Shown in pieces: positions 15,293 through 44,848 of a DNA stretch of 50,201 bases. This stretch comes from Octopus sinensis (lineage: Eukaryota). Numbering within the stretch: the first letter of the stretch is position 1; the number at the start of each line of letters is the position of its first letter. The DNA is taken from contig NW_021834316.1 in NCBI RefSeq assembly GCF_006345805.1, positions 1 through 50,201 of the forward strand, written 5' to 3'. The position numbers and the translations under genes are program-made. The notes below the pieces were generated by a model. The model searched no databases and had not been told where the DNA came from. It saw only the letters and a program-made list of their open reading frames with translations.

Positions 15293-15436
15293 ACAATAAT
15301 AATAATAACAACAATAATAATAATAATGATGATAATAATAATAATAAGAAGAAGAAGAAGGAATGTAATAACAATAATAATAATAATAGTAATGACAAAA
15401 ATAATAATAATAATAATATTAGTAATAATGAAGAAT

Positions 15437-15475
<39 letters not shown>

Positions 15476-15520
15476 GTAATAATAAAGAATGTAATAATAA
15501 TAATAAATATAATAACGAAT

Positions 15521-15572
<52 letters not shown>

Positions 15573-15760
15573 TAATAATAATAAATGACAACAGCAATGC
15601 CAACAACAACAACGACAGCAGCCACAACAAAAACAGAAATCACGCGGGCGAATAGCATCAACAGCAGCAACAGCAGTAACTAGCATCAGTAATTGCAACA
15701 CCACCACCAACAACAACAACAACTGTAGCAACAGCAGCAACAACAACTACAACAACAACA
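15293..15760. repeat. (AAT)n/(AAC)n/(AGC)n compound tract
   Basis: Direct reading. Confidence 0.96.
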
Positions 15761-18182
15761 TCGGGTAGGCAAGTATACCAAACGACGCGGCCATAGCTTG
15801 ATAATGAAGTCATTTTATATTTAATCCATATGCCTCCCCAGGCGGCTTTTCGACGGAGCGGCTGAAACATATTTTTGCCCCCATTGTCTTCTGGGTGCCA
15901 GGCTAACAACAACTTAACAGCAACTCTACGCGTTCGTGAATTGCTATTCATTCAAGTATCTGCTTATTTCTCTCTCTCTCTCTCACTCTCTCTGTCTCTC
16001 TTTCTCTTCCTCCTTCTCTCACTCCCACCTCCTACCATTCTGCTCCACTAAATAACAACAATGGCGAAAGGCTGTCCAGCAGTAAGCATCCAATTGGTTC
16101 ATCCATCTAAAACATTTTATTTATTTGGGTTTAAGAGAAATTCTATTGCTTTCCATGTGTATACCATGTGTTTGGCTTTGGACAGAAAACACAACCCTCT
16201 GTCCACACATTCTTTATATTTGACAATGAAGGCTAAAGATTTGACACGTCTAAGATATGAATATTCGCACCTCTTATTCACCCACACTCTCTCTTTCACC
16301 CTCTCCGTCTTTGCGTATGCGTGTGTATTTGTTTGTGTGTGTTTGTGAGTGTGTTGGTCTGTTTATATGTCTGTAATTCTGAGTGCACCTCTACGGGAGC
16401 GTTGATATATTTGTGGCTATGTGGAGTATGCGTCAAGTTATTTTAGAATGAGGCAGTGTTTGTGAAAGATTGTATATGTGTATGTTTGTATATGTGTATG
16501 TATGTACATGAGTGTATGAGTGGAGGCGAGAAAGAGATAAAATGAAAGAAAGTGTTTGTGCCAACATTGTGTGTATAAGTTTATATATCTATGCTCCCGT
16601 GTGTGTTTTTCTGGGCTCATTTCTGTTTTATATGTGCGCAATATGTACCACGGTGTGGTTTAAGGCAGTGAGGAGAGGCTGGATGATGTTTTGAATAATT
16701 GGGATAGGTGAATAAACGAAAACATTGGGAAATATCTGTGGAAAGAACAAATGAGAAAGAAAAGGAGTAAGAGAGAATAAATGGAATGAAAATAGAAAAA
16801 GGAGAGAACGAAGGATGAATAGAAGCAAAGAAGAGAAATACGAGAAACTGTAAAGATAATGAAGGAATAAGAATAGGCTACGGGGAACGAAGTTTAGCGG
16901 AAACAATATTGAAGGAGAAGAGAGAGGTGCGAGAGGGAAGAAGATGTGGTAAAAGAGAGTGTAGGACAGTAAAGGAGAATAGTAAAGGCTAGTAGTGGCA
17001 AGAGAGAATGAGAAGTGAAGACTGTTAATAAGAGACAATAGGAATAATAAGATTTTGGTAAAGATGAGGGAGGGAGTGGATTTATAGAGAGTGAGAAAAG
17101 ATATAATAAAGGATGGGAAATTGATAGAGAGGAAGAAAGCGGATAGGAATGGAGATAGGGTGATACGAAGAGGTTATACAGAAATTGGGAGAGGAAAATA
17201 GATAGAGTGGGACAGAGAGATAGAAAGACAAAGGGAGTCAGGGAATGTCTATTCGTGAAGGAGAAGAGAAAATGTAGGACTGACACGAGAAGCGTACTTG
17301 GTTACGGCGAAGAAATTTGGTAAAAAGACACGAAATGATGTTTAGTAATGATGAGGGTTTGAAAACGTCGATGGAAAATATGGAATGGGAATGTTTGTTT
17401 CTTCGATCAAAAGAAGAATAATTGAAAAGACAAAACAAAACAAAAAATAAAGAATATATATATATATAAATAATAAAAAAAAGAATGGTAACGAAATCTC
17501 TACAACAATACAACGTCGGAATTAAACAGATGGGGTCAAACGAACGGACAAACATAGCGTCATGAGAATAAAAGAATATTCGGACCAAAGTCTTGTAAAA
17601 CAGCTGGTTACGTCCTTTGACCCCCCCCACTCCTACTCTTACTTATAAAATACTACGCAATACTTTGGTTTCTTCGTTTGTATCAAAAATGCATGAGTTC
17701 GTCTTGATTAACCATTCAAAAGAACTATTGATTTCCCAAAATCGGAGTTCTGTCTACTTCTTCTCTGTTTTGTCCACATGCAAACTGATTCCAACCAAAG
17801 CTTCCAATGTTAGAAATATTTTTCTTAAAAATTCGCAAATCGTTGTAAAAATAAATGAACAACAGACAATAATTGTTATTATTTTTATTATCCAGTATTG
17901 GATTTTTTTTGGTTCTGTCGTTTTCGTTTTTGTTGTAGTTTTTTTAATATTCCTTTCCAACGTTGTTTACTGTATTCGTGTTTAAGAATACGGGTATATT
18001 TGATTTCGTAAAGTCGACGTGACAAACCAAATTATTTCGCTTCTAAATAAAATACATACTTGGAAATATAGATTTGTAGTTCTGACAAATTCTCTCTATG
18101 TATTTATTCCTTTTTCTTATTTTTCTTCATTAATTATTATTATTAATTTTTATTATCATTATTATTATCATTATTATTATTA

Positions 18183-18231
<49 letters not shown>

Positions 18232-19156: not shown

Positions 19157-19495
19157 GGCGCATGGCTCAGTGGTTAGAGCGTCGAGCTTACGATCGTGAG
19201 GTTGTGAGCTCGAATCCCGGACCGGGCTGCGTGTTGTGCTCTCGAGCAAGGCACTTTATTTCACGTTGCTTCAGTTCACTCAGCTGTAGAAATGAGTTGC
19301 GACGTCACAGGTGCCAAGCTGTATCGACCTTTGTCTTTCCCTTGGATAACACTGGTGGCGTGGAGAGGGGAGGCTGGTATGCATGGGCGACTGCTGGCCT
19401 TCCATAAACAACCTTGCCCGGACTTGTGTCTAGGAGGGTAACTTTCAAGGTGCAATCCCATGGTCATTCATGACCGAAGGGGGTCTTTACCCCTT
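19154..19495 (+). mobile_element. SINE family D (tRNA head followed by a gagcaaggcactt central motif)
   Basis: A box TGGCTCAGTGG and B box-like AGCTCGAATCCC; single copy in the window. Confidence 0.8.
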
Positions 19496-19517
19496 TATAT
19501 ATATATATATATATATA

Positions 19518-19921
19518 CCCTTTTAGCCTTTTATTTGTTTCAGTCATTTGACTGCGGCCATGCTGGAGCACCACCTTTAGTCGAGCAAATCGACCCCAGG
19601 ACTTATTCTTTGTAAGCCCAGTACTTATTCTATCAGTCGCTTTTGCCGAACCGCTAAGTGACGGGGACGTAAACACACCAGCATCGGTTGTCAAGCAATG
19701 CTAGGGGGACAAACACAGACACACAAACACACACATACATATACATATATAAATATATACGACAGGCTTCGTTCAGTTTCCGACGACCAAATCCACTCAC
19801 AAGGCATTGGCCGGCCCGGGGCTATAGCAGAAGACACTTGCCCAAGATGCCACGCAGTGGGACTGAACCCGAAACCATGTGGCTGGTTAGCAAGCTATTT
19901 ACCACACAGCCACTCCTACGC
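19518..19921 (-). mobile_element. SINE family A
   Basis: Reverse-complement copy, tail-to-tail with the family D SINE across a (TA)n tract. Confidence 0.92.
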
Positions 19922-20376
19922 ATATATATATATATATTATTACATTTTTCGTCTGTTCCGGAATAGATTGATACGTTCACTAGCCACCAGACTACTACTT
20001 CTCTTTATTTACGTTTTTTTGTGTCCATACTGTCTAAGCGTACATCATTTAATACAAGATGAGCAATCATTCGGCAGGGTACTGGTGTTTATTTGTGGTA
20101 AACTGTATGGAAGTAATGTGGTGATAATAAAGTATTAGAAACTCAAAATGATTATTGCAGATTCCAGACTGTGAGATGAAAATTGAGGAAAGAATCTGAA
20201 GTGGTTTTGTCAAAGTTCTAAAGTAGAAAACGAAGAAAAAACACTGACGTATTTTACAGTTGTCGGTTTGGAGATATGTTCCTGAGTTGCTCGAGTAACT
20301 GAATTATATGAATTATTCTTTGGATTAATGTGTAACTGGTTGAATATTTCAGATACGTGTATCTTTAATGTATTTC

Positions 20377-22802: not shown

Positions 22803-23973
22803 ATATGCATGTATACATGTATATATAATATATGCAATATATAAAGTAATATACTTATATATATTATATCTCAAATGTATCTATCTTTTTCTTAGTTCTC
22901 TTCCTTTATATACATGTGTGTGCGTGTGTGTATGCATATGTTTATATGTGTATATATATGCGTGTGTGTGTGTGTGCAGAGAAATAGAGAACAGGGCGAG
23001 AGAGTGTGTGTGAGAAAGAATGAGAAAGACGATGATAGAGACAGAGTGTGAAGTAGAGAAAGAAAGAAAGAAAGAAAGAAGGAAAGAAAGAAAGAGTGTT
23101 TTAGTGTGGAAGAATATCATATCGTGAACGAACACAGCTTTAAATTACATAATTATTGCTTGATTCTGCAGATCTCTAATGTTTCCAACTTCCGAAGTTG
23201 TAACAGAGAATAGTAGATTTGATTGGAACCGCGATAACTATACTCTAGTTGAATGGTATATAGTAGTTAGAAAATATCTGTGAATAGGGACGGTACAGGA
23301 AAACTATAACTTGATCACCTATGAAGTGATTAAAACTATAATCTATTTTATGGATTTCTCCAAGAGATTAACGGAAGCAATCGTTAAATTTCTTGTCTAC
23401 AAAACATCTTAATATATTAAGACACGAATCATTGAATTAAATGGCCATTACATCATTAGATTTCTACCAAAATTTTTGACCAAAACAATGAATTTCCGGC
23501 TGGTAAAATCTTCACCGAAAATCTAAATTGCATCAATTACTATAAGTCCAACCAATAAATGTATCTGAAAACGTCAACAATTACTTATGAAAGAGTTTGT
23601 ACGTGTGCGGGGTGGAATTGGTTTACTAGTAAGATAAAATTTGAGTTCGATTTCAAACAGAAGATCATTTGTTTGGAAACATGGCTATTGTTGTTCTTGT
23701 TTCGTGGTTGCCGTTATTTTTGTTATTGCTAGTGTTGGTATTATTGTAGTTATTGTATTATTAAGGTGGTGTGCTAATAGAACTGCTGCTATGCCGGACA
23801 AAATGCTTAATGGAATATTTTCTGGCTTTTTATATCCATTCGGGATCGCTAAAATATAATAAATCGAATACTGTGGTCGAGGTAATCGATTAACCTCTCA
23901 CCCTAAAGTTGAGACCCTGGTGCCGAAATTTGAAATCATTATTAATATTGTTATTATTATTATTGTTATTATT

Positions 23974-24508
23974 GTGCATGTCATCAAAGTGACATTGGGG
24001 TAAAATATACGAAGCCCAATATACCCATCATGACTACCCGTCTGATAAGGGTACACCAGGTACATGCATCACAACCATATGTGCGCGACATGGCGATCTC
24101 ATATTAAGATAAACAGCACATGACCTTGCAGGTGGGGCCCAGTTAGAATTTTCTTCTGGTCGAATAGCCCATCCCGCTCAAAAGGTCCTTGAATAAGTAT
24201 TGTTTAAGGATGCTGAACAAACCATCCAGGTTTCCAAAGGAGAATTATCCGAACCCCAAAGAATTCCTTTCAACACACTGATATGATGCTCCCCCACTAC
24301 TTCTGCTTGTGCTCAAAGATGCACATATCGTCAGCCACTAAGGGACATAGTTAACTGGTTAAGGTCAAACAACTGACAAGCAAATCTGTGGTATTGAGCA
24401 GAATATTTGCTGTAGCCCATCTTTAATACCAAGACAAGACAATGTACATGATAACACTTGCAATCAGTTAAGATGCGAAGCCATGAGAGCCACTGTCTGG
24501 TACTGCAT
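23974..24508. repeat. ~560-bp non-coding unit, copy 1 (most diverged; about 17 nt missing at left end)
   Basis: Collinear with 28589-29139, running from gtgcatgtcatcaaagtgac to gagccactgtctggtactgcat; bounded by (ATT)n. Confidence 0.93.
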
Positions 24509-24632
24509 ATTATTATTATTATTATTATTCAGTAGTTTTATTTTTATTTTTATAGCGTGCTTTCACTTCACTACCGAGCGTAGCTCTGTGTGCCTTGGGT
24601 ATGTGCTGTGATTTGTTGTGATGCTCTGATAG

Positions 24633-26690
24633 TTATTGTATGGAAAGTGTTCTGCGTAGGATGTGTGCAGTGCCTAGTAGTGCAATTTTCTGTATGTTAT
24701 ATGTGTTTGTAAATCCTGGTGTTTTTGTTATGTATTTGTCTGAATATTTTTTTATCATGCCTAATGCACCTACTATGATAGGAATTGTTTCTGTTTTCAG
24801 ATTCCACATTCTAGTTACCTCTATTTCCAGGTCTTTGTATTTTGAGAGTTTCTCCATTTCTTTTAGAGACACGTTGTCATCTGCCGGTATTGATACATCA
24901 ATTAGAAAGCATTTTTTTTCTTCATGGTCTCTGACAACTATATCTGGTCTGTTGGCCTTAATTTCTCTATCTGTGTGTATCGGCATATCCCAGAATATGG
25001 TTGCTTTCTCGTTTTCTGTGACCTTTTCTGGTGTGTGCCTATACCATCTTTTTTCTGTTGTTATTCCATAATGTTGGCATAGCTTCCAATGTATGTAGGT
25101 TCCAACTCTGTCATGTCTGTGAATATATTCCTTCTTAGCCAGGACTGGGCAGCTAGAGATAATATGATTTATTGTTTCTTGTCCATCTCCACATATTCTG
25201 CAGTTACTTGTAATATTTCTTTTCATTACATGTTTTTGGTAATTTCTGGTGGGGAGGCTTTGGTCTTGTGCTGCAATTAAAAATCCCTCTGTTTCTTCTT
25301 TGAGTCCTGAGCTTCTCAACCATTGCTGGGATTTTTCTTTGTCTATTTCTTTTGCGTTTAGTTTAGTGCAGTATTTACCATGAAGGGGTTTTTCTTGCCA
25401 TCGTTTTATCATGGCTCGTTGCTGTTCTATTTTTAGTTTGGATTTCATTTGTTTTATAGCTTTTGTTGTTTCTTCATAATCTTTTTCTTCTTCTTTGTGT
25501 TTATTAGGTGGTATGATTTCTTGTTTGTATTTGTCAGCTTCCTTAAATACTGAGAACAGTTTTTTGTTTTGCTCGTGTTTTGCTGCTATCTGGATCAGTT
25601 TTCCTTCCTTCTGAAGTAGGTATTTTTGCAGTCCTATGGTGGTTATTTTATAGTAGTTTTCCAGCTGTATGAGGCCTCTACCACCTTCTATACGTTGTAT
25701 ATATAGTCTTTCTATGTCAGATTTTGGGTGATGCATCCTAGATCCTGTCATTATTTTTCTTGTTTTCCTATCTATTTTGGTCAGTTCATTTCGTGTCCAG
25801 TTAAGGATATTGTAGCTGTAACTTATAACTGGGACAGCTAAAGTGTTGATACCTATTATCTTGTTTTTAGCATTGAGCTCTGTGTTTAGTATTGATCTAA
25901 CTCGTCTATAATATTCTTTTTTTATTTTCTCTTTCATTTGTGTGTGTTGTGTCTTATCTAGTTCCTGGATTCCTAAGTATTTGTAAGTTTGGCTTTGGTC
26001 TAATTCTTTTATTTCATTGGTTTTATCTAGTGTGATGTTGTTACTCTTAACTAGTTTTCCTCTTTTCATGGTTACTTTGGCGCATTTTTCTAATCCAAAT
26101 TTCATATCTATTTCTTTGGTAAATCCATGAACTGTCTTTAATAGTGTTTCCAGCTGTTTGTCATTTGCAGCGTATAGTTTTAGGTCATCCATATATAAAA
26201 GGTGGCTGATCGTTTTGCCGTAACATTTATATCCGCATCCAGTTCTATTTAGCATATCAGATAGAGGTGACAGTGCCAAGCAGAAAAGGAGTGGAGAGAG
26301 CGTGTCTCCCTGGAATATTCCTCTTCTAATGGGGATGTCTTTGGTTTTCATGAGTCCCTCTTTTGTTTGGAGGTGTAGGACTGTTTGCCATTTATTCATA
26401 GAGTGCTCTATGAATTTTATGATTGTTGGTGCTACTTTGTTAATGGCTAGTGTTTCGAGGATCCATGTGTGGGGGATGCTATCAAACGCCTTTTTGTAGT
26501 CAATCCAGGCCATACTGAGGCCTTTCTTCTTTCTGTGGCTGTCTTCAGTTATGGCTTTATTAATCATTAGTTGATCTTTACAGCCATATGAGCCTTTGCG
26601 GCATCCTTTCTGCTCTTCTGGGAACAGTTTGTTTTCGTCCAGGTGCTTGTTCAGCCTTTGTGATATCACTGCAGTAAATGCCTTGAACAT
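24633..26690 (-). CDS. Uninterrupted 685-aa C-terminal part of the R4/Dong ORF: reverse transcriptase, CCHC zinc knuckle and PD-(D/E)xK restriction-like endonuclease
   Basis: RT motifs WIDYKKAFDSIPH, RGIFQGDTLSPLLF, HLLYMDDLKLY and YKYLG. Knuckle CRICGDGQETINHIISSC, then RHDRV. RLE motifs RPDIVVRD, DVSIP and EKLSKYKDL. Confidence 0.95.
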   Translation of the reverse strand: MFKAFTAVISQRLNKHLDENKLFPEEQKGCRKGSYGCKDQLMINKAITEDSHRKKKGLSMAWIDYKKAFDSIPHTWILETLAINKVAPTIIKFIEHSMNKWQTVLHLQTKEGLMKTKDIPIRRGIFQGDTLSPLLFCLALSPLSDMLNRTGCGYKCYGKTISHLLYMDDLKLYAANDKQLETLLKTVHGFTKEIDMKFGLEKCAKVTMKRGKLVKSNNITLDKTNEIKELDQSQTYKYLGIQELDKTQHTQMKEKIKKEYYRRVRSILNTELNAKNKIIGINTLAVPVISYSYNILNWTRNELTKIDRKTRKIMTGSRMHHPKSDIERLYIQRIEGGRGLIQLENYYKITTIGLQKYLLQKEGKLIQIAAKHEQNKKLFSVFKEADKYKQEIIPPNKHKEEEKDYEETTKAIKQMKSKLKIEQQRAMIKRWQEKPLHGKYCTKLNAKEIDKEKSQQWLRSSGLKEETEGFLIAAQDQSLPTRNYQKHVMKRNITSNCRICGDGQETINHIISSCPVLAKKEYIHRHDRVGTYIHWKLCQHYGITTEKRWYRHTPEKVTENEKATIFWDMPIHTDREIKANRPDIVVRDHEEKKCFLIDVSIPADDNVSLKEMEKLSKYKDLEIEVTRMWNLKTETIPIIVGALGMIKKYSDKYITKTPGFTNTYNIQKIALLGTAHILRRTLSIQ

Positions 26691-28280
26691 AGTAGGGAGG
26701 CAGTTATTGGTCTGTAGTTTTCTGGTTTTTCTGTTTCATTTGATTTGGGAATTAAGATGGTTTTCCCCTTCGTGAGCCATTCAGGCATTGTCTCTGGCTC
26801 TGCTAGTACGTTGTTAAAGTTTTCAGCCAGCTTTTTGTGCATTCCTGTTAGATATTTCAACCAGAAGTTGGGGATCTTGTCATGCCCAGGTGCCTTCCAG
26901 TTGCTTAGTCTTTGCAGTGCCTGGGTGACCTCTTCAGTTGTTATGGGGGTCCAAAGTTGTTCAGATGCCGAGTTTGTTATCTTGATACTCCTTTTTTTGG
27001 TGGTTCGTTCGCCGACCATATCTCTCTCCAGAATTCTTCCAATTCTTCTGCCGTTGGTGCTGCAGTGACTTCTATTTTATTTTTGCCCAGTTCTTGGTAG
27101 AACTTTTTGGGGTTGGAGCTGAACTTTTTGTTTTCTTCAAAGAAGCGTTGGCGTTTCTTGTACCGGCGGATCCTTTGTGCTTTGGCAAGGATATCTTACT
27201 TCAGCTTTTCTTTTATTTCAGGCAAATCTTTCTCTGTGATGTTATATTTGCGGAGTATTTTTGTTCTCTTTTTGTTGCTCAGTAGCGTTGATTGTTTGCT
27301 GATTTCATTAAGAATCGACAGGTCTTTTCTAATTTATTTTATTTTGCTTTGGATGTTATTTATCCACAGGGTTTGTTTGGGTGGTGGTACTCCTGTTTGG
27401 GCGGGTTTGGATGAGTATCCAGCTTCTTTTGTGGCTGCAGTGGCTGCTGCGTATATTAGGTTATTTAGCTCAGTGATATCACTTTTTTTTGATTCAGTGG
27501 CTATCAGTTCAGTGACGGCTAGGTTTATGCTGTTTATAATAGGTGTTGTTATTTCGTTTATTTTGATTCTTGGGAGGTATGGTCGGTGGTCCATTTTGAG
27601 CTCTGTGGGTTTCAGTTCTTTGATTATTTTATTTTTTATATTATCATAATCATTAGGCTCCCCTTCGTTGTTTACATCGTGTTTGTTGGGAATGTTGCGT
27701 TTGTCTTCGTGTTTTACAGTTTCAGTGTTTATATTATTGGGCATTGTTGTGTGGCTTCTATCTACATTTTCCTGGTGTATGTTTTCTTTTAGGTGTTCTA
27801 TTTCTATTTCTGATATTTTTTTTTTGTGTTGAGAATGTATCTTCGTACGTTAGCTAATTTATTAGGATTCATTGCTGTATCCAAGTCTATATCTCTATTA
27901 TTTTCCTTCCATATTTTATATGTATGTGTTGTTGTATTTACCTTTTTTGGGTAGAGTACTGCTGTGAAGTATGCGTGTAAGATAGAAATGTATTCCTCAC
28001 GTGTCCATTTACGTCTTTTGGGTTTTATTTGCGGGACATGAGGTACAACGTCCGGCCCATTATTTTGACGGTCGTCATTTTCGTAGGGTACCGGTCCGTT
28101 TATTTCTGTTGTCACATTATTTCGCACGTGTAGTTTTTCGTACATTTTTTGTTGTAAATTTAATGTACGTACCGCTCGATTGTTATTCTTGGGTTGAATA
28201 GTATCGGTGGCATTTAATTTCTTCGTAGTTCCTTTGTACATGGTGTTTGGGGTCAGGGATGATCGTGATGTTTCACGCAT
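26666..28280 (-). pseudogene. Disrupted N-terminal half of the R4/Dong ORF
   Basis: Reads RRKWTREE...ILNTKK. After a frameshift in the T10 run at 27816-27825 it continues ISEIEIEHLKEN...MPNN. In-frame TAA stops at 27334-27336 and 27196-27198, then AQRIRRYKKRQRFF...KKFYQEL...EFWREIW. A frameshift near 26960-27000 precedes WKAPGHDKIPNFWLK...NYRPIT, and a 1-bp deletion near 26704 breaks ITCLPTM. Confidence 0.85.
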
Positions 28281-28484
28281 GTTTACATGTGTTGCGTTAG
28301 AGATGGAGATGATATCGAGTCAAAATGCATCATTTCGTTTCGAAAATAGTAATAAATTTCAATTAGTATTACTTACTCGGGTACAGTCCAATTCTTTGTT
28401 AGTAAAACTTTGGCTCCATAGGATGTCCTTGTTTTCGATGTTTGTGGATAAATTTCGGAGCTCTGAATTTTCCTTCTTACATCT

Positions 28485-28544
28485 TAAAAGTCCCCCGGTG
28501 TTCCTAAAAGTCCCCCGGTGTTCCTAAAAGTCCCCCGGTGTTCC
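28485..28544 (-). repeat. Three perfect tandem copies of a 20-mer at the 5' tip of the R4 element
   Basis: taaaagtcccccggtgttcc at 28485, 28505 and 28525, directly followed by (ATT)n. Confidence 0.97.
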
Positions 28545-28577
<33 letters not shown>

Positions 28578-28588
28578 CATTATTATCA

Positions 28589-30270
28589 TTGAGTGAGAGA
28601 GCAGTTCATGCCATCAAAGTGACACTGGGGTAAAATATACGAAGCCCAATATACCCATCATGACTACCCGTCTGATAAGGGTACACCAGGCACATGCATC
28701 ACAACCATATGTGCGCGACATGGGGATCTCATATCAAGATAAACAGCACATGACCTTGCAGGTGGGGCCCAGTTAGAATTTTCTTCAGGTTGAGTAGCCC
28801 ATCCAGCTCAAAAGGTCCTTGAATAAGGGTTGTTTAAGGATGTTGAAAGAACCACCCATGTTTCCAGAGGTGAACTATTCAAACCCCAAAGAATCCCTCT
28901 CAACACACGGCTATGATGCTCCCCCACTACTTCTGCTCGTGATCAGAGATGCACATATCGTCAGCCACTAAGGGACATAGTTAACTGGTTAAGGTCAAAC
29001 AACTGACAAGCAAATCTGTGGTATTGAGCAGAATATTTGCTGTAGCCATCTTTTATACCAAGACAAAACAATGTACATGATAACACTTCCAATCAGTTAA
29101 GATCAGAAGCCATGAGAGCCACTGCCTGGTACTGCATCATTATTATTATTATTGAGTGAGAGAGCAGTTCATGCCATCAAAGTAACACTGGAGTAAAATA
29201 TACGAAGCCCAGTATACCCATCATGACTACCCGTCTGATAAGGGTACACCAGGCACATGCATCACAACCATATGTGCGCGACATGGTGATCTCATATCAA
29301 GATAAACAGCACATGACCTTGCAGGTGGAACCCAGTTAGAATTTTCTTCAGATCGAGTAACCCATCCCGCTCAAAAGGTCCCTGAATAAGGGTTGTTTAA
29401 GGACGTTGAACGAAACACCCATGTTTCCAGAGGTGAATTATTCAAACCCCAAACAATCCTTCTCAACACACGGCTATGATGCTCCCCCACTACTTCTGCT
29501 CATGATCAGAGATGCACATATCGTCAGCCATTAAGGGACATGCTCAACTGGTTAAGGTCAAACAACTGACAAGCAAATCTGTGGTATTGAGCAGAATATT
29601 TGCTGTAGCCCGTTTTTTATACCAAGACAAAACAATGTACATGATAACACTTCCAATCAGTTAAGATCAGAAGCCATGAGAGCCACTGCCTGGTACTGCA
29701 TCATTATTATTATTATTGAGTGAGAGAGCAGTGCATGCCATCAAAGTGACACTGGAGTAAAATATACGAAGCCCAGTATACCCATCATGACTACCCGTCT
29801 GATAAGGGTACACCAGGCACATGCATCACAACCATATGTGCGCGACATGGTGATCTCATATCAAGATAAACAGCACATGACCTTGCAGGTGGAACCCAGT
29901 TAGAATTTTCTTCAGATCGAGTAACCCATCCCGCTCAAAAGGTCCCTGAATAAGGGTTGTTTAAGGACGTTGAACGAAACACCCATGTTTCCAGAGGTGA
30001 ATTATTCAAACCCCAAAGAATCCTTCTCAACACATGGCTATGATGCTCCCCCACTACTTCTGCTCGTGATCAGAGATGCACATATCGTCAGCCACTAAGG
30101 GACATGCTCAACTGGTTAAGGTCAAACAACTGACAAGCAAATCTGTGGTATTGAGCAGAATATTTGCTGTAGCCCATCTTTTATACCAAGACAGAACAAT
30201 GTACATGATAACACTTCCAATCAGTTAAGATCAGAAGCCATGAGAGCCACTGCCTGGTACTGCATCAGGG

Positions 30271-30271
<1 letters not shown>
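28589..30271. repeat. Head-to-tail array of three ~560-bp units (about 28589-29139, 29152-29703, 29716-30271) with short (ATT)n spacers
   Basis: The marker gagtgagagagcag occurs at 28591, 29154 and 29718 (periods 563 and 564). Bodies are near-identical and contain no long ORF. Confidence 0.96.
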
Positions 30272-30333
<62 letters not shown>

Positions 30334-30334
<1 letters not shown>

Positions 30335-30570
30335 TTCATTTCATTTCTAAGTGATTTTGATTTCGTTTGCTCTGGCTAATTCTAAAGAGCGGGCAGCGAC
30401 CTGTAGTCAAATATCTCAAAGGATCATTTTGCGCGGTACTGAACATGTTCTACCCATATGTCAATCCCAATGTTTCCTACAAATTTCTCAAATCTAGTTG
30501 TGATGCTCACAGCGCCTCAGCAACTATTGGGATGGCAGTTATATTCTTAATCTTCAATGTTTTTCTTGTT
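30334..30570 (-). mobile_element. 5'-truncated 3' end of a second R4/Dong-like LINE family
   Basis: Minus strand reads AIPIVAEAL.ITTRFEKFVGNIGIDIWVEHVQ, resembling the R4 C-terminus (cf. IPIIVGALG in the intact copy). A short 3' UTR ends in (AAT)n at 30272-30333. Confidence 0.65.
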
Positions 30571-30758
30571 GCTTGGCAAGAGTTTGGCAGCACTGATAGA
30601 GCGGCGTAAAAATTGCCTGGTCGAAACATTTTGGGCACTTTTATATTCTAGGTTCAACCACCGCCAAATTCTACTTTGATATTTATTCCTCTGGGACCAG
30701 ATAAACTAAAATACTTGTCATACACTCATATATATACTTGTATATATATATTCACAGT

Positions 30759-31060
30759 GGAGGCACATGTCCTAGTGGTTAGAGCAGCGGACTATCGGTC
30801 GTAGAGATTGCGGGTTCGAATCTCAGACCGGGCGATGTGTGTGTTTATGAGCGAAACACCTAAGCTCCATGCGGCTCTGGCAGAAGGTAATGGCGAACTT
30901 CTGCTGACTCTTTCACCACAACTTTCTCTCACTCTTTCCTCCTGCATCTTGCAGCTCATCTGCGACGGACCGGCGTCCCATCCAGGTGGGGAACCTATAC
31001 GGCAAGGAAACCGGGAAATCGGCCCTTATGAGCCAGGCGTGGCTGGAGAAGGAACAAACA
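30759..31060 (+). mobile_element. SINE family C (tRNA-like head)
   Basis: ggaggcacatgtcctagtggttagagcagcggact...gggttcgaatctcagaccggg, body gagcgaaacacctaagctcc. Confidence 0.85.
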
Positions 31061-31415
31061 TATATACTCACATATACAAGGTCGATTGAATCATTTAAGT
31101 CCTTCCTCCACAAATTCATTGTTTTCTGCCTAAATTATTATTTTACACCTTTAGGACAGTTATTTTTCTCGCTCCATATTTGCTTCATCATTGTATTGAG
31201 GACTTTTCCGACCATTCATGCTGAACATGTTTTCTTCACTACACCTACTTCCAGATTAAGATCTTGTTTTTCAAGGTTTGCTCTCAAAAATATTTACCAT
31301 TGATTCCAAAGCTTCCATAATAATCGGCAATGTCATGAACTTGTTAAATTCTCTGCTGCAGCACTTGAGGTTTCCATAATGAAAGTTCTTAGCACGTACT
31401 ACTTTTCCTTATTCC

Positions 31416-31417
<2 letters not shown>

Positions 31418-31472
<55 letters not shown>

Positions 31473-31473
31473 G

Positions 31474-31512
<39 letters not shown>

Positions 31513-31528
31513 ATTATTAATATTATTA

Positions 31529-31560
<32 letters not shown>
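31418..31560. repeat. (ATT)n microsatellite
   Basis: Direct reading. Confidence 0.97.
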
Positions 31561-31563
<3 letters not shown>

Positions 31564-32019
31564 ACTATTCTAAAGTGTACAAGTCACAGCGATTACGTTA
31601 ACGTTGCATATATTCTTGTTGTTGACGACTGCAATATACAGCCTGCTGTGTTATACTATTCATTATTTTAGTATTAGAAAGCCCGACAACAACGTCACTT
31701 CAACTTTTTCGAGGGATTCCATTTCTCTTCACAGAAAACGGTTATAGCTTCATTTTTATTTTATTCCGTATTTTTTTTCTGTGCATGCAAAACTAAATTT
31801 CCTGCAAAAATTCTAGTGCATTGTTAAATGAATCTTATCATATCTACGTTTTTTTTTTGTATTCATTCTAAGTTAACTGTAAGCATGCAATACAATGTGC
31901 GATGTAGTTTCCTCTGAATTATCGTACATTCTGAATTGCTGTTATTTTATGTAAACACCGACCGAAATTGTACACGGTCCTTGTAATGTTCACTATGCAT
32001 GATACCAATGAAAAAATAA

Positions 32020-32073
32020 AAGAAATTATCATCATCATCATCATTTTCACCATCGTCATTATTATTATTATTA

Positions 32074-32129
<56 letters not shown>

Positions 32130-32136
32130 ATCATCA

Positions 32137-32175
<39 letters not shown>

Positions 32176-32201
32176 CATTATTATTATTATTAACATCATC
32201 A

Positions 32202-32232
<31 letters not shown>

Positions 32233-32267
32233 CATTATTATTATTATTAACATCATCATCATCATCA

Positions 32268-32305
<38 letters not shown>

Positions 32306-32372
32306 ATCATCATCATTATTATTATTATTATTATCATTATTATTATTATTAACATCATCATCATCATCATCA

Positions 32373-32425
<53 letters not shown>

Positions 32426-32540
32426 ATCATCATCATTATTATTTATTATTATCATTATTATTATTATTAACATCATCATCATCATCATCATTATTATTAT
32501 TATTATTATTATTTTGAATATCATCATTATTGTTATTATT
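32020..32540. repeat. (ATT)n/(ATC)n tract with a recurring AAC hinge
   Basis: attattaacatcatcatc recurs about seven times. Confidence 0.95.
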
Positions 32541-32542
32541 AA

Positions 32543-32744
32543 GGCGGCGACCTGGCAGAAAGGTCATTTCGCCAAAAAATATGCTTAGCTGCATTTCTTC
32601 CGACTTCCCGTTCTGAGTTCAAATGCTGTCAAGGTTGACGTTGCGTTTCATATTTTCGTGGTCAACATCAAGAATACCAGTCACGTACTGAGACCGATGT
32701 TATCGACATGCCCCATCCCCTAACATTTAAGCGATTATTATTAC

Positions 32745-32798
<54 letters not shown>

Positions 32799-33012
32799 GG
32801 TAGCGAGTTGGTAGATTTCTTAGCACCGAGAGAAATGCAGAGCGATATTTCGTCCGTCTTTACGTTTTGGGTTCGAATTCTACCGCGGTCGACTTTGCTT
32901 TTATTCTTTTCGGGGTAGATGAAATAAATACCAGTGAAACACTGGGGTAGGTGTAGTCGACTAGTCTCTTCCAACCAAAAATTTAAGGTCGTGTGCCTTT
33001 AGTAGAAAGGAT
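32543..33012 (+). mobile_element. Two old SINE family B copies (about 32543-32730 and 32799-33012) separated by (ATT)n
   Basis: Heads ggcggcgacctggcagaa and ggtagcgagttggtag, followed by the family B core. Confidence 0.8.
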
Positions 33013-33017
33013 TATTT

Positions 33018-33329: not shown

Positions 33330-33667
33330 AACGAAAGCCACGTTGTTATACTCATTCTGTAAAAGGTGGATTTTAACGGGTGGAGAAGTGAACCATCCTG
33401 GGGTACAGAGGATTCGCAATCTAGACTAGGGTCTGAAAGTTTATCACACTATAGTGGGTTACACCATGGTTCCTCTGCTTTGTGACAGAAGTAGAAAGAA
33501 AGAGTGAGAGAAAGTTGTGCTGAAAGAGTACAGCGGGGATCACCACCCGCCCCCGCCGGAGCTTAGGTGTTTTTGCTCAATAAACACTCAGAATGCCCGG
33601 TCTGGGAACCGCAACCGCGTTCTTACGACCGCGAGTCCGCTACCCTAACCACTGGGCCACTGCGCCT
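33330..33667 (-). mobile_element. SINE family C
   Basis: Reverse-complement head ...ccctaaccactgggccactgcgcct. Confidence 0.8.
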
Positions 33668-33956
33668 ACACACCTGTTGTTCTTCTTCTTCTTGGTGTTT
33701 TCTGTTGCTGCAGGAAGATGGCAAAATTCTTAAAGCGCTCATAAAATATTTAACTCAGCTCTTTATTTTCGGAGTTCAAATACTGCGAGATAAATTCTTC
33801 CTTTTATATCAGTCGATAAAATACTGTAGTAGTAAAGCCTTGTGCTCGGTGAAGTTATCTGATCTCTTCCATTCAAAACTGCTTGCACTGTACCTAAATA
33901 GGAAATACTTCTGTTAACGTTAATATTATTGTTGTTGTAGTTCTTGCTGCTACTAA

Positions 33957-35651: not shown

Positions 35652-35951
35652 GCCCTTTTCTAGCCTAGCCAGGCTCATGGGCCCGGTTTCCCGGTTTCTG
35701 TGGCGCATGTGTTCCCCCCAGCTGGACGGGCCGCCAGTCCATCGCATCGTTACTCAAGAAACAGGAAGAGAGAGTGAGAGAAAGTTGTGGCGAAAGAGTA
35801 CAACAGTGGTCGCCACCCACCCCCTGCCGGAGCCTCGTGGATCTTTTAGGTGTTTCGCTCAATAAACACACACAATGCCCGGTCTGGGAATAGAAACCGC
35901 GATCCTCCGACCGCGAGTCCGCTGCCCTAACCACTGGGCCATTGCGCCTCC
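35652..35951 (-). mobile_element. SINE family C
   Basis: Reverse-complement head ...ccctaaccactgggccattgcgcctcc. Confidence 0.88.
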
Positions 35952-35974
35952 ATATGTATCCATGTAAGGAATCT

Positions 35975-36600
35975 CAAATAGAGAATCATTTGCATATCTT
36001 ACAAAACTTCACTGTGCCGGTAAAAGATCAGATCTGGAGAATGGGCGTTAGATTCTTTTGCTCTTTCTTCCAGAAGCCTAATACTTTTAGATATTTGTGT
36101 AAATTGGTCTGTGCATAGACAAATGCATTTACATAGGATAGGAACAAATGAAAATTTATTGTCAGGACACAAGAGTTGTAAGTTTCGCGTTAATTCACCA
36201 CAAAGTTTTACATTTTTCCTTGTGATGACACATTTACATCCGCTGGACAGGTGATCACTACAATACTGCATGAATTCCTATTATGTGTTCACCAAATTCC
36301 TGTTTTTATCTGAGTGTTCCGCTAGTATTCCTTCTTTTAAAAGGTGAGAATACATGGTGGTTCTGATAAGTAAGGACAATGATTCCATAGGATAGCATTG
36401 TAAATCGTCTTTGCAATTATGTCATGCTTCAGAGGCAGGTAGTATCTCATACACTTTTTGGAGCAGCTGCCGATGATGTGGATATCTTCCACGAGAATTT
36501 GGCATAACCGGTATTTCTGTCATCTCCAATCAAGTTTCTCCTTCATATAAACCATCTCTACGTATTAAGTTCAGGTTTTCTCGTGTTACTCATCATATAT
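35975..36600 (-). mobile_element. Decayed 3' fragment of a third RLE-type (R4/Dong- or NeSL-like) LINE
   Basis: Frameshifted translation gives EDIHIIGSCSKKCMRYYLPLKHDIIAKTIYNAI (CCHC/RHD region), ELTRNLQLLCPDNKFSFVPI and GTVKFCK. Confidence 0.7.
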
Positions 36601-38549: not shown

Positions 38550-38784
38550 AAGGCGGCGAGCTGGGAGAAACGTTAGCGCGCCGGGCGAAATGTTTAGCGG
38601 TATTTCGTCTGTCGTTACGTTCTGAGTTCTAATTACGCCGAGGTCGACTTTGCCTTTCATCCTTTCGGGGTCAATAAATTAAGTAAAAGTTACGCACTGG
38701 GGTAGATGTAATCGACTTTAATCCCTTTGTCTGTCCTTGTTTGTCCCCTCTATGTTTAGCCCCTTGTGGGTAGTAAAGAAATAT
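38550..38784 (+). mobile_element. Young SINE family B copy with a 16-bp target-site duplication
   Basis: atatattccaggtagg at 38534-38549 and 38785-38800. Confidence 0.93.
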
Positions 38785-40139: not shown

Positions 40140-40508
40140 GTTGTTGCTGTTGCTATTGAGCAAACGGTCTTCATCCCAGAGCACGCAAGACGGTGGAAGT
40201 CCGAAACGTGGTCCTTTGCTATTCGTAAGACCCGCAGAAGAGAAAGCAAGTCAACCTCCGACACCGAGAGCATCGACGGATGGATGAATGCGCATCCATG
40301 CTCAGCGGTTGCGTAGGAAGTCGGGGACAAAAAGCAGGAAGAAAGAGTGAGAGAAAGTGGGAGAGAAAGAGTACAACAGGGGTCGCCACCCCACCCCCCT
40401 GCCGGAGCCTCGTGGAGCTTTAGGTGTTTTCGCTCAATAAACACAACGCCTGGTCTGGGAATCGAAACCGCGAGTCCGCTGCCCTAACCACTGGGCCATT
40501 GCGCCTCC
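40140..40508 (-). mobile_element. SINE family C (different 3' region)
   Basis: Same head and body as the 35652 copy; divergent distal half. Confidence 0.85.
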
Positions 40509-41631: not shown

Positions 41632-42690
41632 AGGGGTCACGTTCCGCGGGTAAGGCGCTCCACCTGTTGTCAACAACCCCTGAATGGGGGGCTGAGTATA
41701 CCGTGGTTCCTGATGCGCAGACATGCGCTTAGGGAGCCACATCTCTAGCGTTTCTTCGACGGTGAACGGGCGTGGCCGCCGTTTGTTAGACTCGTTCTCC
41801 CACAGCTCGACATTTGGACTGAGCTGCAATCCTGGATTACGCGTAGACCGAGGAGGGGCGCTTGTCACCTTGAGTGCCATCAAGCGCTCACAGTCTTCCA
41901 CCTGTCGGTGGTAGTTCCTCTCTAACATTTTGTAGAGGGTTAGTGGAGGAAAAGTGCTACGACGTTTTCGGGGAAACTGTGGGTATCGACGAGGATCAAC
42001 TCCCCGGATGACTATCAAACCGGGGCCATTGGATAACCTCCTGAAATACCTTCCCTGACACTGCTACCTGTGTGGGGGCGCTGCCGTTCGGGGTCAACTC
42101 TACAGGCACGGAAGTGCCGTCAACCGAGCCTGCCCGAGGTGGGCGCAGAGCGACGAAACTGTTCTGCATGCACTCGTCCAATGCCCGATCATTGCTGACC
42201 TGTGGGTTTATGACGAACACCTGCTGTCACCTGTGTGAAGAAGCCCGCTAGATGTAGCATGGTGGACACGCTTCACAGGGCTAAATACAGACACTTTCCT
42301 CTTTGGCCAAGCCCTCAAAAACTTCAAGTTTCATTTGAAAAAGAACGTGAGGGTGGAGAAGGAAGCGTTGCCTTGTAGCAAAGTTGCTGAAAGGTGAATG
42401 TCGGAAAAGTGACCTGTGTGAAAGGACACATTTTGAGCATGCACCCGTGAAAAATAAAAGAAGGGCTCTCGCCCTGTTGATCAAGCATCCGTGGCTTTTG
42501 TAGGGTTTTTTCCACGAGTAACCTTAAATCGCCTTTTCCTATTAGGAGCCTTATTTGTTTAACGACCAAGTTTTTTTTTGTTTACACGCTTTAAAAACAC
42601 ATTTACATCGTCCTGTCTTTGTCTCTTCATACAACGTTATGTAAACTCATTTTACCAATAAAAGAATTAATTATTATTATTATTATCATT
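41632..42690 (+). mobile_element. 5'-truncated L1/Tx1-clade LINE 3' end
   Basis: GC-rich block. Frameshifted translation gives VRRSTCCQQPLNGGLSIPWFLMRRHAL and LYRHGSAVNRACPRWAQSDETVLHALVQCPIIADLW (zf-RVT-like knuckle, second C mutated to W). AATAAA near 42657, then (ATT)n. Confidence 0.8.
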
Positions 42691-42940: not shown

Positions 42941-42990
42941 GTTGTTGTATAGTCAACGCCACCAGCATCAGGATTAAGATTAACTCGATT

Positions 42991-43214
42991 TTACTCTTTT
43001 ACTTGTTTCAGTCATTTTACCGTGACCATGCTGGAGCACCGTCTTTAGTCGAGCAAAATCGATCCGAGGACTTATTCTTTGTAAGCCTAGTACTTATTCT
43101 ATCTCTCTCTTTTGCCGAACCGCTAAGTTACGGCGACGTAAACAGACAGCATCGGTTGTCAAGCGATGTTGTGTGGGACAAACACAGACACACAAACATA
43201 CACATACACATACA

Positions 43215-43276
<62 letters not shown>

Positions 43277-43437
43277 ACGGGGTTCTTTCAGTTTCCGTCT
43301 ACCAAATCCACTCACAAGGCTTTGGTCGTCCCAAAGCTATAGTAGAAGACGCTTGCCCAAGGTGCTACGCAGTGGGACTGAACCCGGAACCAGGTGGTTG
43401 GTAAGCAAGCTACTTACCGCACAGCCACTCCTACGCC
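42991..43437 (-). mobile_element. SINE family A
   Basis: Reverse-complement copy with an expanded internal (TA)n. Confidence 0.9.
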
Positions 43438-43819
43438 TAATCTCAACATTATTATTGTTGCATTTGTTACTATTGTACTTGCTGCAGTTGTAATTATTTA
43501 AAGATTCTAAGTAATTTTATTGCAATTACCGATAGCGCCAGTGTCATTAGATAAAATTATAGACTTACAATTTACGTTATGTTTTTTATTTACTTTCTGT
43601 CATTCCCTCGTTAATTATCTTTGCCATCTACGCTTTTCTTTATTTTATACATATGATTATATATGCATATGCATATCCATATCGTCTAACTCACTTACAT
43701 ATGCACACACATACACACAGAGACAAACACACACAAAGGTACATGCATTATACGATTTTTATCCCAAAGGCTGTAATATGGAAAATTAACGTGTCACTCT
43801 ACATAAATGTGTATACTAA

Positions 43820-44300: not shown

Positions 44301-44355
44301 CATATATATACGTAAGAGAAACGTAGAGGGTAACCGTTCAGCAAGACTAGACAAA

Positions 44356-44767: not shown

Positions 44768-44771
44768 TATG

Positions 44772-44848
<77 letters not shown>

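What the first reader, a model, noticed from the sequence alone, without database searches (positions are those of the whole stretch)
23940..30570. A 6.6-kb train of elements all parked in one (TAA)n microsatellite
Seen: six modules (560-bp unit, full-length R4 LINE, three 560-bp units, 3' end of a different R4-type LINE) are each separated only by (ATT)n. Both LINEs are on the minus strand with 3' ends running into (AAT)n, and no other TSD is visible. Established: Dong of Bombyx mori (R4 clade) inserts into TAA repeats, and RLE elements are target-specific. Inference: each insertion regenerates the target, so the locus works as a self-renewing landing pad for autonomous R4 families and a non-coding passenger.
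Basis: partly seen in the sequence, partly recalled or inferred. Interest (0 to 1): 0.75.

Follow-up and report, generated by a model that had tools for sequence, protein, structure and literature searches.

The report
Dong-like LINE train in (TAA)n microsatellite
A dead but full-length Dong-type jumping gene and four copies of an unknown 550-bp repeat sit in one (TAA)n/(ATT)n microsatellite; this follows from the known TAA-repeat targeting of Dong elements, and one of the repeat copies most likely arose by local duplication.

Summary
Four copies of a 535-554-bp non-coding unit and one 4,016-bp minus-strand LINE lie between 23,974 and 30,271, separated only by (ATT)5-21.

The LINE has RT, CCHC and restriction-like endonuclease domains. 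It spans the whole homologue profile but carries 3 frameshifts and 2 stops, so it is dead.

Relatives fetched from other animal genomes end in TAA-sense repeats at 14 of 14 3' ends. They form head-to-tail trains in 3 of 5 long-contig loci. The family is therefore Dong-like and TAA-specific, and trains are a family habit, as published Dong biology predicts.

- The sixth module (30,335-30,570) does not score above background as a LINE 3' end.
- Copy 3 of the unit looks like an unequal-crossover hybrid of copies 4 and 2, with identical (ATT)5 spacers, so there were fewer landings than modules.
- The unit's strand, origin and dependence on the LINE remain open. It shares nothing with the LINE except the microsatellite.

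The train is also longer than reported (about 23,700-33,015). It includes three plus-strand tRNA-like SINEs with (ATT)n on both sides, the opposite polarity to the LINE.

Verdict: a new member of a known kind, of moderate interest.

The parts
23713..23762 (.). Degenerate (GTT/ATT)n tract, the left edge of the train
   Evidence: TRF period 9, consensus GTTATTGTA, 5.7 copies; sequence read
23763..23937 (+). Diverged tRNA-like SINE copy, preceded and followed by ATT repeats
   Evidence: Aligns head to tail with the window's abundant SINE family; junction ...GTATTATT|AAGGTGGTG and ...GAAATC|(ATT)
23938..23973 (.). Imperfect (ATT)12
   Evidence: TRF
23974..24508 (.). Unit copy c1, the oldest (89-92% to the others). 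It lacks the 13-15 nt GAGTGAGAGAGCAGT end that the other copies have. Sense strand undetermined.
24508..24529 (.). (ATT)7 between c1 and the LINE 3' end
24530..28545 (-). Dong-like RLE LINE, 4,016 bp, complete in extent but with 3 frameshifts and 2 in-frame stops. It has RT, CCHC and RPD..D RLE motifs. The 3' UTR of about 103 nt ends ...AAAACTACTG(AAT)7.
   Evidence: Pfam RVT_1 4.5e-27 and zf-RVT; profile columns 15-1156 of 1157 in six pieces; R2 proteins in PDB E 2e-30; 2,520 homologues, best 56-57% identity
28485..28546 (-). Tandem repeat of 20 bp x 3.1 (TAAAAGTCCCCCGGTGTTCC on the + strand) at the extreme 5' end of the LINE
   Evidence: TRF, 100% matches
28545..28590 (.). Imperfect (TAT)15 between the LINE 5' end and c2
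28591..29138 (.). Unit copy c2
29139..29153 (.). Spacer, exactly (ATT)5
29154..29702 (.). Unit copy c3. It matches c4 at alignment columns 72-489 and matches c2 at column 510 and at its right end. Probable unequal-crossover hybrid.
   Evidence: site table
29703..29717 (.). Spacer, exactly (ATT)5, identical to the previous one
29718..30271 (.). Unit copy c4. Its right end carries 5 extra nt (…GCATCAGGGC) that c2 and c3 lack.
30272..30334 (.). Perfect (ATT)21
   Evidence: TRF score 126
30335..30756 (.). There is only an eye-level motif on the minus strand (…IPIVAEAL / VSITTRFEKFVGNIGIDIWVEHVQ). It may be flanking DNA or a very old element.
31418..31562 (.). (ATT)48
   Evidence: TRF
31768..31932 (-). 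Remnant of an RLE-LINE CCHC zinc-finger region between two (ATT)n tracts
   Evidence: tblastn E 0.002; 27 bits in the frameshift-tolerant alignment, about the 95th-99th percentile of background
32058..32541 (.). Compound (ATT)161 with interspersed ATC blocks
   Evidence: TRF; sequence
32542..32733 (+). Diverged tRNA-like SINE copy with (ATT)n on both sides
32734..32797 (.). (ATT)21
   Evidence: TRF
32798..33015 (+). Diverged tRNA-like SINE copy, preceded by (ATT)21 and followed by a decaying ATT/GTT tract

Best explanation
Shown:
- A (TAA)n/(ATT)n microsatellite was hit by a Dong-like non-LTR retrotransposon with a restriction-like endonuclease, whose family targets TAA repeats.
- The LINE now sits between copies of a ~550-bp non-coding repeat that occupies the same microsatellite.

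Inferred mechanism, from published Dong/R2 biology:
- The endonuclease nicks the TTA strand.
- The 3'-OH primes reverse transcription on the (UAA)n-ended RNA.
- The new copy ends up with TAA repeats on both sides, so a hit does not destroy the target. It splits it and adds a fresh tail.
- Microsatellite polarity forces all such inserts into one orientation, which gives head-to-tail trains.

Inferred history of the array: it grew by a mixture of landings and local recombination. There were at least three separate arrivals of the 550-bp unit (c1, c2, c4) and one of the LINE. One unequal crossover between c2 and c4 then created c3 and duplicated the (ATT)5 spacer.

Left open:
- Whether the 550-bp unit is a retroposon carried by the Dong machinery or a local satellite-like repeat.
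- The same tract system also holds tRNA-like SINEs with (ATT)n on both sides in the opposite orientation, so it serves at least two kinds of element.
For: - LINE domains and completeness.
- TAA repeats at both LINE junctions in the window.
- Family-level specificity: all 14 3' ends carry a TAA-sense tract 75-207 nt after the stop. Nine of 14 have at least 5 units, against 3.5% of random windows, and TTA-sense tracts never exceed 2 units (sequences).
- A 5' junction with (TAA)6 in L005, and (TAA)n upstream in L014 and L015.
- Trains in other genomes: L001 with at least 4 copies, L003 with 3, and L015 with a LINE, an unknown 320-bp module and a LINE fragment.
- The hybrid pattern of c3 and the identical (ATT)5 spacers.
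- Three of three diverged SINE copies are ATT-flanked, whereas copies of the main SINE family have ordinary target-site duplications.
- Literature: Dong elements target (TAA)n in silkworm, mosquito, snail, ostracod and cnidarians (PMC3812793, PMC7998251). Dong RNA is cut from a (TAA)n co-transcript by a 5' ribozyme (PMC3774820). TE tandems arise by double insertion at preferred sites and then expand (PMC5932611).
Against: - The resident LINE is dead, and no polymorphism or dating data exist.
- Placement in the R4 clade was not tested by phylogeny against Dong or R4 reference sequences.
- The crossover model for c3 rests on few informative sites: column 510 and the terminal indel. Column 49 conflicts with it.
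- Nothing links the 550-bp unit to the LINE except location. There is no shared 3' end, no dispersed copies were found, and its sense strand is undetermined. The minus-strand folding z of -4.5 is matched by control windows.
- Several other (ATT)n tracts in the window carry no recognisable Dong-like LINE or unit at their edges.
Confidence: 0.6

Rival explanations
1. The 550-bp unit is a local satellite-like tandem repeat of 564 bp including an (ATT)n linker, and was never mobile. The only true insertion in 23.9-30.3 kb is the LINE, which landed in the (ATT)n linker between c1 and c2.
For: - Constant 563/564-bp period with identical (ATT)5 spacers.
- Neighbouring copies are the most similar.
- No pol III head, tRNA or Rfam match.
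- No shared tail with the LINE.
- No other copy in the 50-kb window or in the searchable collections.
- The ends of c1 are not conserved.
Against: - The unit ends differ between copies (…GCAT, …GCATC, …GCATCAGGGC) in the way retroposon junctions do.
- c1 is 8-11% diverged from the others.
- A non-LINE module flanked by TAA tracts also sits in a Dong train in another genome, L015.
Confidence: 0.3
2. One reading: every module, including c2, c3, c4 and the 30,335-30,570 piece, is an independent target-specific insertion into one self-renewing microsatellite.
For: All boundaries are (ATT)n. The LINE family is target-specific and forms trains elsewhere.
Against: - The two (ATT)5 spacers and the right ends of c2 and c3 are identical, while the body of c3 is c4-like.
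- The sixth module is not detectably a LINE.
Confidence: 0.12
3. c2-c3-c4 were laid down in one retrotransposition event. The reverse transcriptase jumped end to end from one unit RNA to the next, so each spacer is an RNA-templated (UAA)5 tail.
For: - Equal 5-unit spacers occur here and between LINE copies in L001 and L003.
- c2 and c3 share one end, and the terminal copy c4 is 5 nt longer.
Against: - c2 differs from c3 and c4 by about 4%, while c3 and c4 differ by 1.6%. The copies are therefore not the same age unless they came from different source RNAs.
- The model requires the minus strand to be the unit's sense strand, which is unproven.
Confidence: 0.08
4. Assembly artefact: the tandem units, or the LINE placement, result from mis-joining of repeats at microsatellites.
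For: Microsatellite-bounded repeats are hard to assemble. No read data were available.
Against: The copies are not identical: c3 and c4 differ at 9 sites and c2 at about 25. The junctions are individually distinct.
Confidence: 0.05

Closest known systems
Dong (Bombyx mori) and DongAg/DongBg, R4-clade non-LTR retrotransposons specific for (TAA)n
   Same: - A single large ORF with RT, CCHC and a C-terminal restriction-like endonuclease, and no AP endonuclease.
- TAA-sense repeats at the 3' and 5' junctions.
- Present in molluscs, insects and cnidarians (PMC3812793, PMC7998251); the hits here include coral, shrimp and insect proteins.
   Different: - Best database relatives are only 56-57% identical.
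- No phylogeny against the Dong or R4 reference sequences was possible.
- No 5' HDV-like ribozyme was detected with Rfam.
- This copy is degenerate.
TE tandem dimers formed by double insertion at preferred sites and later expanded by unequal exchange (McGurk & Barbash 2018, PMC5932611)
   Same: Insertion-site preference puts copies head to tail. A recombination step then multiplies them (the c3 hybrid).
   Different: Here the preferred site is a microsatellite that each insertion leaves intact on both sides, and several unrelated elements share it.
R2 SIDEs, non-autonomous derivatives of an RLE LINE (PMC3414825)
   Same: A short non-coding element occupying the same specific target as an RLE LINE would be the analogue.
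   Different: SIDEs keep the R2 5' ribozyme and 3' UTR. The 550-bp unit shares no detectable sequence with the resident LINE, and no ribozyme was found.
SINEU and Tx1-Mar: trans-mobilisation inferred from shared target preference (PMC4494074)
   Same: The logic is the same: a non-coding repeat and a target-specific LINE found at the same kind of site.
   Different: SINEU has snRNA-derived heads and many dispersed copies. Here only four clustered copies are known and no head was recognised.
RTE-type LINEs and SINEs with microsatellite tails (PMC2887409; octopus RTE in PMC9115989)
   Same: The three plus-strand SINE copies carry a trinucleotide (ATT)n tail and lie in ATT tracts.
   Different: No partner LINE with an ATT tail was identified in the window. 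Their polarity is opposite to the Dong-like LINE.

Membership tests
R4/Dong clade, TAA-specific LINE | Reverse transcriptase domain | tested here: met
   Pfam RVT_1 E 4.5e-27; 2,520 homologues at E<=1e-10
R4/Dong clade, TAA-specific LINE | CCHC motif and restriction-like endonuclease C-terminal to RT; no AP endonuclease | tested here: met
   zf-RVT. CRICGDGQETINHIISSC and RPDIVV…CFLIDVS are present in the translation. The alignment to solved R2 proteins reaches residue 655 of 685. No Exo_endo_phos hit.
R4/Dong clade, TAA-specific LINE | Insertion in (TAA)n, with TAA-sense repeats at the 3' and 5' junctions | tested here: met
   Window junctions; 14/14 3' ends across loci and 5' junctions in L005, L014 and L015
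R4/Dong clade, TAA-specific LINE | N-terminus without zinc fingers, with a diverged Myb/SANT-like domain (PMC7998251) | tested here: inconclusive
   Pfam finds neither zinc fingers nor Myb in the window N-terminus or in four full-length homologues. The published detection needed HHpred.
R4/Dong clade, TAA-specific LINE | Groups with Dong (L08889) and R4 (U29445) in an RT phylogeny, apart from R2, NeSL, CRE and HERO | not tested
   No reference sequences were on hand. The only indirect link is that a Pediculus humanus corporis protein is among the hits, and that species is listed among the R4/Dong-like elements aligned in PMC7998251.
R4/Dong clade, TAA-specific LINE | 5' HDV-like self-cleaving ribozyme (PMC3774820) | tested here: inconclusive
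   No Rfam match at E<=10 in the window region or E<=1 in five homologue loci. Such ribozymes are poorly captured by sequence models.
Non-autonomous partner (SINE/SIDE-like) of the LINE, for the 550-bp unit | Short and non-coding | tested here: met
   No ORF of 80 aa or more lies in the unit
Non-autonomous partner (SINE/SIDE-like) of the LINE, for the 550-bp unit | 3' end shared with the partner LINE | tested here: not met
   Local alignments of the unit ends against the LINE UTRs are no better than shuffles. Only the microsatellite is shared.
Non-autonomous partner (SINE/SIDE-like) of the LINE, for the 550-bp unit | Same target and same polarity as the LINE | tested here: inconclusive
   The target is shared. 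Polarity is unknown: minus-strand folding z is -3.1 to -4.5 for c2-c4, but 4 of 16 control strand-windows reach -3.4 or lower. The end variation is ambiguous.
Non-autonomous partner (SINE/SIDE-like) of the LINE, for the 550-bp unit | Dispersed copies with independent flanks | not testable with these tools
   No copies outside 23.9-30.3 kb in the window. No matches in the metagenome, prokaryote-genome or viral collections.
Non-autonomous partner (SINE/SIDE-like) of the LINE, for the 550-bp unit | RNA-gene-derived head or internal pol III promoter | tested here: not met
   No tRNA and no Rfam family
Satellite / tandem duplication | At least 3 head-to-tail copies with constant period, neighbours most alike | tested here: met
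   Spacing of 563/564 bp; c3-c4 98.4% against c2-c3 95.6%
Satellite / tandem duplication | Recombinant (hybrid) monomer with duplicated junction | tested here: met
   c3 equals c4 at 14 shared-derived sites (columns 72-425). c3 equals c2 at column 510 and at the terminal indel. The two spacers are identical. One conflicting site at column 49.

The most novel reading that the evidence does not exclude
The 550-bp unit is a previously undescribed non-autonomous retroposon that uses (TAA)n as its landing site and shares with Dong-like LINEs nothing but the microsatellite tail. The repeat itself would then be the only handle needed for trans-mobilisation. The same tracts are used in the opposite polarity by (ATT)n-tailed tRNA-SINEs, whose tails in turn seed new Dong targets. 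Together these would make a two-way, self-propagating landing pad.
Probability: 0.2. Interest if true: 0.6.

Novelty: new member of a known kind. Interest (0 to 1): 0.35.

Why it matters
Microsatellite-specific LINEs are a known way for mobile elements to avoid genes. This locus, together with the trains found in other genomes, shows concretely that a TAA-specific element leaves its target usable. Hits therefore pile up head to tail and can be further multiplied by unequal crossover, which is one route from transposon to tandem repeat. If the 550-bp unit proves to be mobile, it would be the first described non-autonomous partner of an R4/Dong-type LINE. Practically, such trains are hot spots for assembly errors and for microsatellite-marker artefacts.

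Tried and rejected
- Sixth module as a LINE: six-frame hmmsearch, tblastn with 120 homologue C-termini, and my own frameshift-tolerant profile alignment all stay within background. Excising the (ATT)48 tract did not join the CCHC remnant at 31,768-31,932 to a C-terminal piece at 31,060-31,417.
- Unit against the LINE 5'/3' UTRs, the 'tail', the LINE remnants and the ATT-tailed SINEs: no alignment better than shuffles.
- RNA structure as a guide to the unit's sense strand: minus-strand z is about -4.5 and plus-strand about 0, but control windows reach the same values. The four copies show no compensatory changes. I dropped this as evidence.
- HDV-like ribozyme: nothing from Rfam in the window or in homologue loci. 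Inspection by eye was unconvincing.
- Terminal inverted repeats, Helitron or Harbinger-like ends for the unit: none convincing (sequence inspection).
- More copies of the unit: two metagenome scans, one prokaryote-genome scan and one viral scan found none. The source species is evidently absent from the protein collection, since the best LINE hit is 57% identical.
- The Myb/SANT domain reported for R4/Dong was not detectable with Pfam.
- Species identification was not achieved. The window has no tRNA or Rfam hits and no obvious host exon among the long ORFs.


Full report
**What is in the sequence**

Between 23,974 and 30,271 there are four copies of one non-coding unit:
- c1 at 23,974-24,508
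- c2 at 28,591-29,138
- c3 at 29,154-29,702
- c4 at 29,718-30,271

One 4,016-bp element lies on the minus strand at 24,530-28,545. Everything between these modules is ATT repeat:
- (ATT)7 at 24,508-24,529
- imperfect (TAT)15 at 28,545-28,590
- exactly (ATT)5 at 29,139-29,153 and again at 29,703-29,717
- perfect (ATT)21 at 30,272-30,334

Perfect (ATT)n tracts of four or more units cover 2.3% of the window. Ten element ends all abutting such tracts is therefore not chance.

**The LINE**

- Its longest ORF (685 aa) hits Pfam RVT_1 (E 4.5e-27) and zf-RVT.
- The translation shows a CCHC motif followed by RPDIVV…CFLIDVS, the PD-(D/E) signature of a restriction-like endonuclease.
- It aligns to solved R2 retrotransposon proteins at E 2e-30 through the RT, linker and endonuclease regions. 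No AP endonuclease or N-terminal zinc finger is found.
- A profile built from 39 full-length homologues is covered from column 15 to 1156 of 1157, in six pieces. These imply three frameshifts and two in-frame stops. The copy is complete in extent but dead.
- On its sense strand the 3' UTR ends …AAAACTACTG(AAT)7. The 5' end starts with a 20-bp x 3.1 tandem repeat right after (ATA)n.

**Is the family really TAA-specific?**

The best database relatives are only 56-57% identical. They come from many animals, with named hits from a coral, a shrimp, a louse and beetles. I fetched DNA around seven of them.
- At 14 of 14 LINE 3' ends (13 foreign plus the window) a TAA-sense tract follows the stop codon by 75-207 nt.
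- Nine of the 14 tracts have at least five units. Only 3.5% of random 320-nt windows from the same loci reach that. TTA-sense tracts never exceed two units.
- One family, seen in several sequencing runs, has the same 3' end followed by (AAT)5-8 and then at least three different downstream flanks. It also has (TAA)6 directly at the 5' end.
- This matches published Dong biology. Dong elements target (TAA)n in silkworm, mosquito and a snail (PMC3812793), and in ostracods, 'most insects, mollusks and cnidarians' (PMC7998251).
- I could not run a phylogeny against the Dong and R4 reference sequences, so clade membership rests on architecture and target.

**Trains are a family habit**

Three of the five long-contig loci from other genomes hold head-to-tail LINE copies separated by short TAA-sense tracts:
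- L001 has at least four copies, with spacers of 5, 5 and 3 units.
- L003 has three copies.
- L015 has a full LINE, (AAT)12, a 320-bp non-LINE module, more (TAA)n and then a LINE 3' fragment.

All copies within a train share one orientation. This is expected if microsatellite polarity dictates which strand is nicked and primed.

**The 550-bp unit**

It has no ORF of 80 aa or more and no tRNA or Rfam match. It has no convincing terminal inverted repeats and no other copy in the window. It has no copy in the metagenome, prokaryote-genome or viral collections.

It shares nothing detectable with the LINE's UTRs, with the neighbouring LINE remnants or with the SINEs.

Its ends vary between copies. 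The right ends read …GCAT, …GCATC, …GCATC and …GCATCAGGGC, and c1 lacks 13-15 nt at the left end. That pattern fits retroposon junctions, but it does not say which end is 5'.

The minus strand of c2-c4 folds with z of -3.1 to -4.5, against about 0 for the plus strand. However, 4 of 16 control strand-windows from the same 50 kb reach z of -3.4 or lower. There is also no covariation among the four copies. I do not count this as evidence. 'Passenger of the LINE' therefore remains a hypothesis.

**Fewer landings than modules**

At the sites that distinguish the copies:
- c3 carries all 14 shared-derived states of c4 between alignment columns 72 and 425.
- c3 agrees with c2 at column 510 and at the right-hand terminus, where it lacks AGGGC.
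- The c2|c3 and c3|c4 spacers are both exactly (ATT)5.

An unequal crossover between c4 on one chromatid and c2 on the other predicts exactly this. The crossover would lie in the last ~95 columns of the unit (alignment columns 490-582): c2 - spacer - [c4 left + c2 right] - spacer - c4. One site (column 49) disagrees.

This fits the published route from insertion-site preference to tandem dimers to expanded arrays (PMC5932611). Template jumping in a single event, or three separate precise insertions, remain possible but are less economical.

The LINE shows few disabling mutations (three frameshifts and two stops in 3.4 kb), whereas c1 and c2 differ by 8%. This suggests, very roughly, that the LINE arrived in a spacer between units that were already there.

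**The sixth module**

The region 30,335-30,570 (really up to about 30,756) is not detectably a LINE tail:
- tblastn with 120 homologue C-termini gives E of 0.7-9, with mutually inconsistent hits on both strands.
- A frameshift-tolerant profile alignment gives 16-20 bits. The window's background has a median of 16.3 and a 90th percentile of 22.2.
- On the minus strand there is an eye-level motif (…IPIVAEAL / VSITTRFEKFVGNIGIDIWVEHVQ) that resembles RLE-LINE C-termini, and it does run into (AAT)21.

**The train is longer and two-way**

To the left, a diverged tRNA-like SINE (23,763-23,937, plus strand) is preceded by degenerate ATT/GTT repeats and followed by (ATT)12.

To the right come, in order:
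- (ATT)48
- a CCHC remnant of another minus-strand RLE LINE at 31,768-31,932 (E 0.002; 27 bits)
- a compound (ATT)161
- two more plus-strand copies of the same SINE subfamily (32,542-32,733 and 32,798-33,015), each beginning right after ATT repeats and followed by ATT repeats

Copies of the window's main SINE subfamily instead carry ordinary target-site duplications at unrelated sites. The tract system therefore also serves an ATT-tailed SINE group, in the opposite polarity to the Dong-like LINEs. Its partner LINE was not identified.

**Mechanism, with status**

Shown:
- the element types, their order and orientation
- the microsatellite junctions
- family-wide TAA association and trains
- the hybrid pattern of c3

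Inferred from published Dong/R2 work (PMC3774820, PMC3414825):
- the endonuclease nicks within the repeat
- reverse transcription is primed on a (UAA)n-ended RNA
- the 5' end is defined by self-cleavage of a read-through transcript, with variable 5' junctions from microhomology
- each insertion leaves repeats on both sides

Not shown:
- any activity at this locus
- a ribozyme
- the unit's dependence on the LINE

**Novelty and limits**

Dong-type (TAA)n targeting is well known, including in molluscs, and a full-length Dong consensus exists for Octopus bimaculoides (PMC9115989). I could not identify the species of this window. The train is a clear, slightly under-described consequence of that biology. 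The only potentially new item is the 550-bp unit.

All statements about genome-wide behaviour of the unit are untestable here, because the source genome is not in the searchable collections. No step had to be referred.

Noticed in passing
window 23763-23937, 32542-32733, 32798-33015 (+): Three diverged copies of the window's tRNA-like SINE superfamily each start right after ATT repeats and are followed by ATT repeats. Their polarity is opposite to the Dong-like LINE. Copies of the main subfamily (for example 38550-38784, with a 14-bp target-site duplication ATATTCCAGGTAGG) are not microsatellite-associated.
   Followed up: partly
window 32058-32541: The (ATT)161 tract is compound: runs of ATT alternate with AACATCATC… blocks at roughly 60-100-bp intervals. 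This suggests higher-order duplication within the microsatellite.
   Followed up: no
window 28485-28546: A perfect 20-bp x 3.1 tandem repeat forms the extreme 5' end of the LINE. Its function (promoter or processing signal?) is unknown.
   Followed up: no
window 36023-36564 (-), 42092-42220 (+), 19168-19308 (+): Further weak LINE-like CCHC/RLE remnants (tblastn E 0.003-0.08). The one at 36 kb abuts a SINE copy instead of a TAA tract.
   Followed up: partly
window 3060-3508, 7618-8068, 11500-11900, 19496-19937, 42983-43441, 44355-44837, 46005-46440: An abundant repeat family of about 440 bp (76-92% identity) occurs seven times in 50 kb. A family of about 300 bp (30757-31052, 33487-33671, 35654-35952, 40328-40508, 47865-48082) and a SINE of about 240 bp make the window very repeat-dense.
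   Followed up: no
L015 7601-7922: In another genome, a non-LINE module of about 320 bp sits between (AAT)12 and (TAA)5 inside a Dong-like train. This is a possible analogue of the 550-bp unit.
   Followed up: no
L001 1-8189; L003 1-6120: Head-to-tail trains of three to four or more Dong-like LINE copies, several of them 5'-truncated, are separated by only 2-5 TAA units in an unidentified ENA assembly (ERZ25067903).
   Followed up: yes
protein P0054: A close homologue of this animal LINE is labelled as a protein of a cyanobacterial MAG. This is probably host-DNA contamination of that bin.
   Followed up: no
window 1298-1479, 10704-10739, 15295-15584, 18133-18231: Other (ATT)n/(AAT)n tracts in the window have no recognisable Dong-like LINE or unit at their edges. 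Many are compound with TTC, CAT or AGT repeats, so the genome is generally rich in trinucleotide microsatellites.
   Followed up: partly
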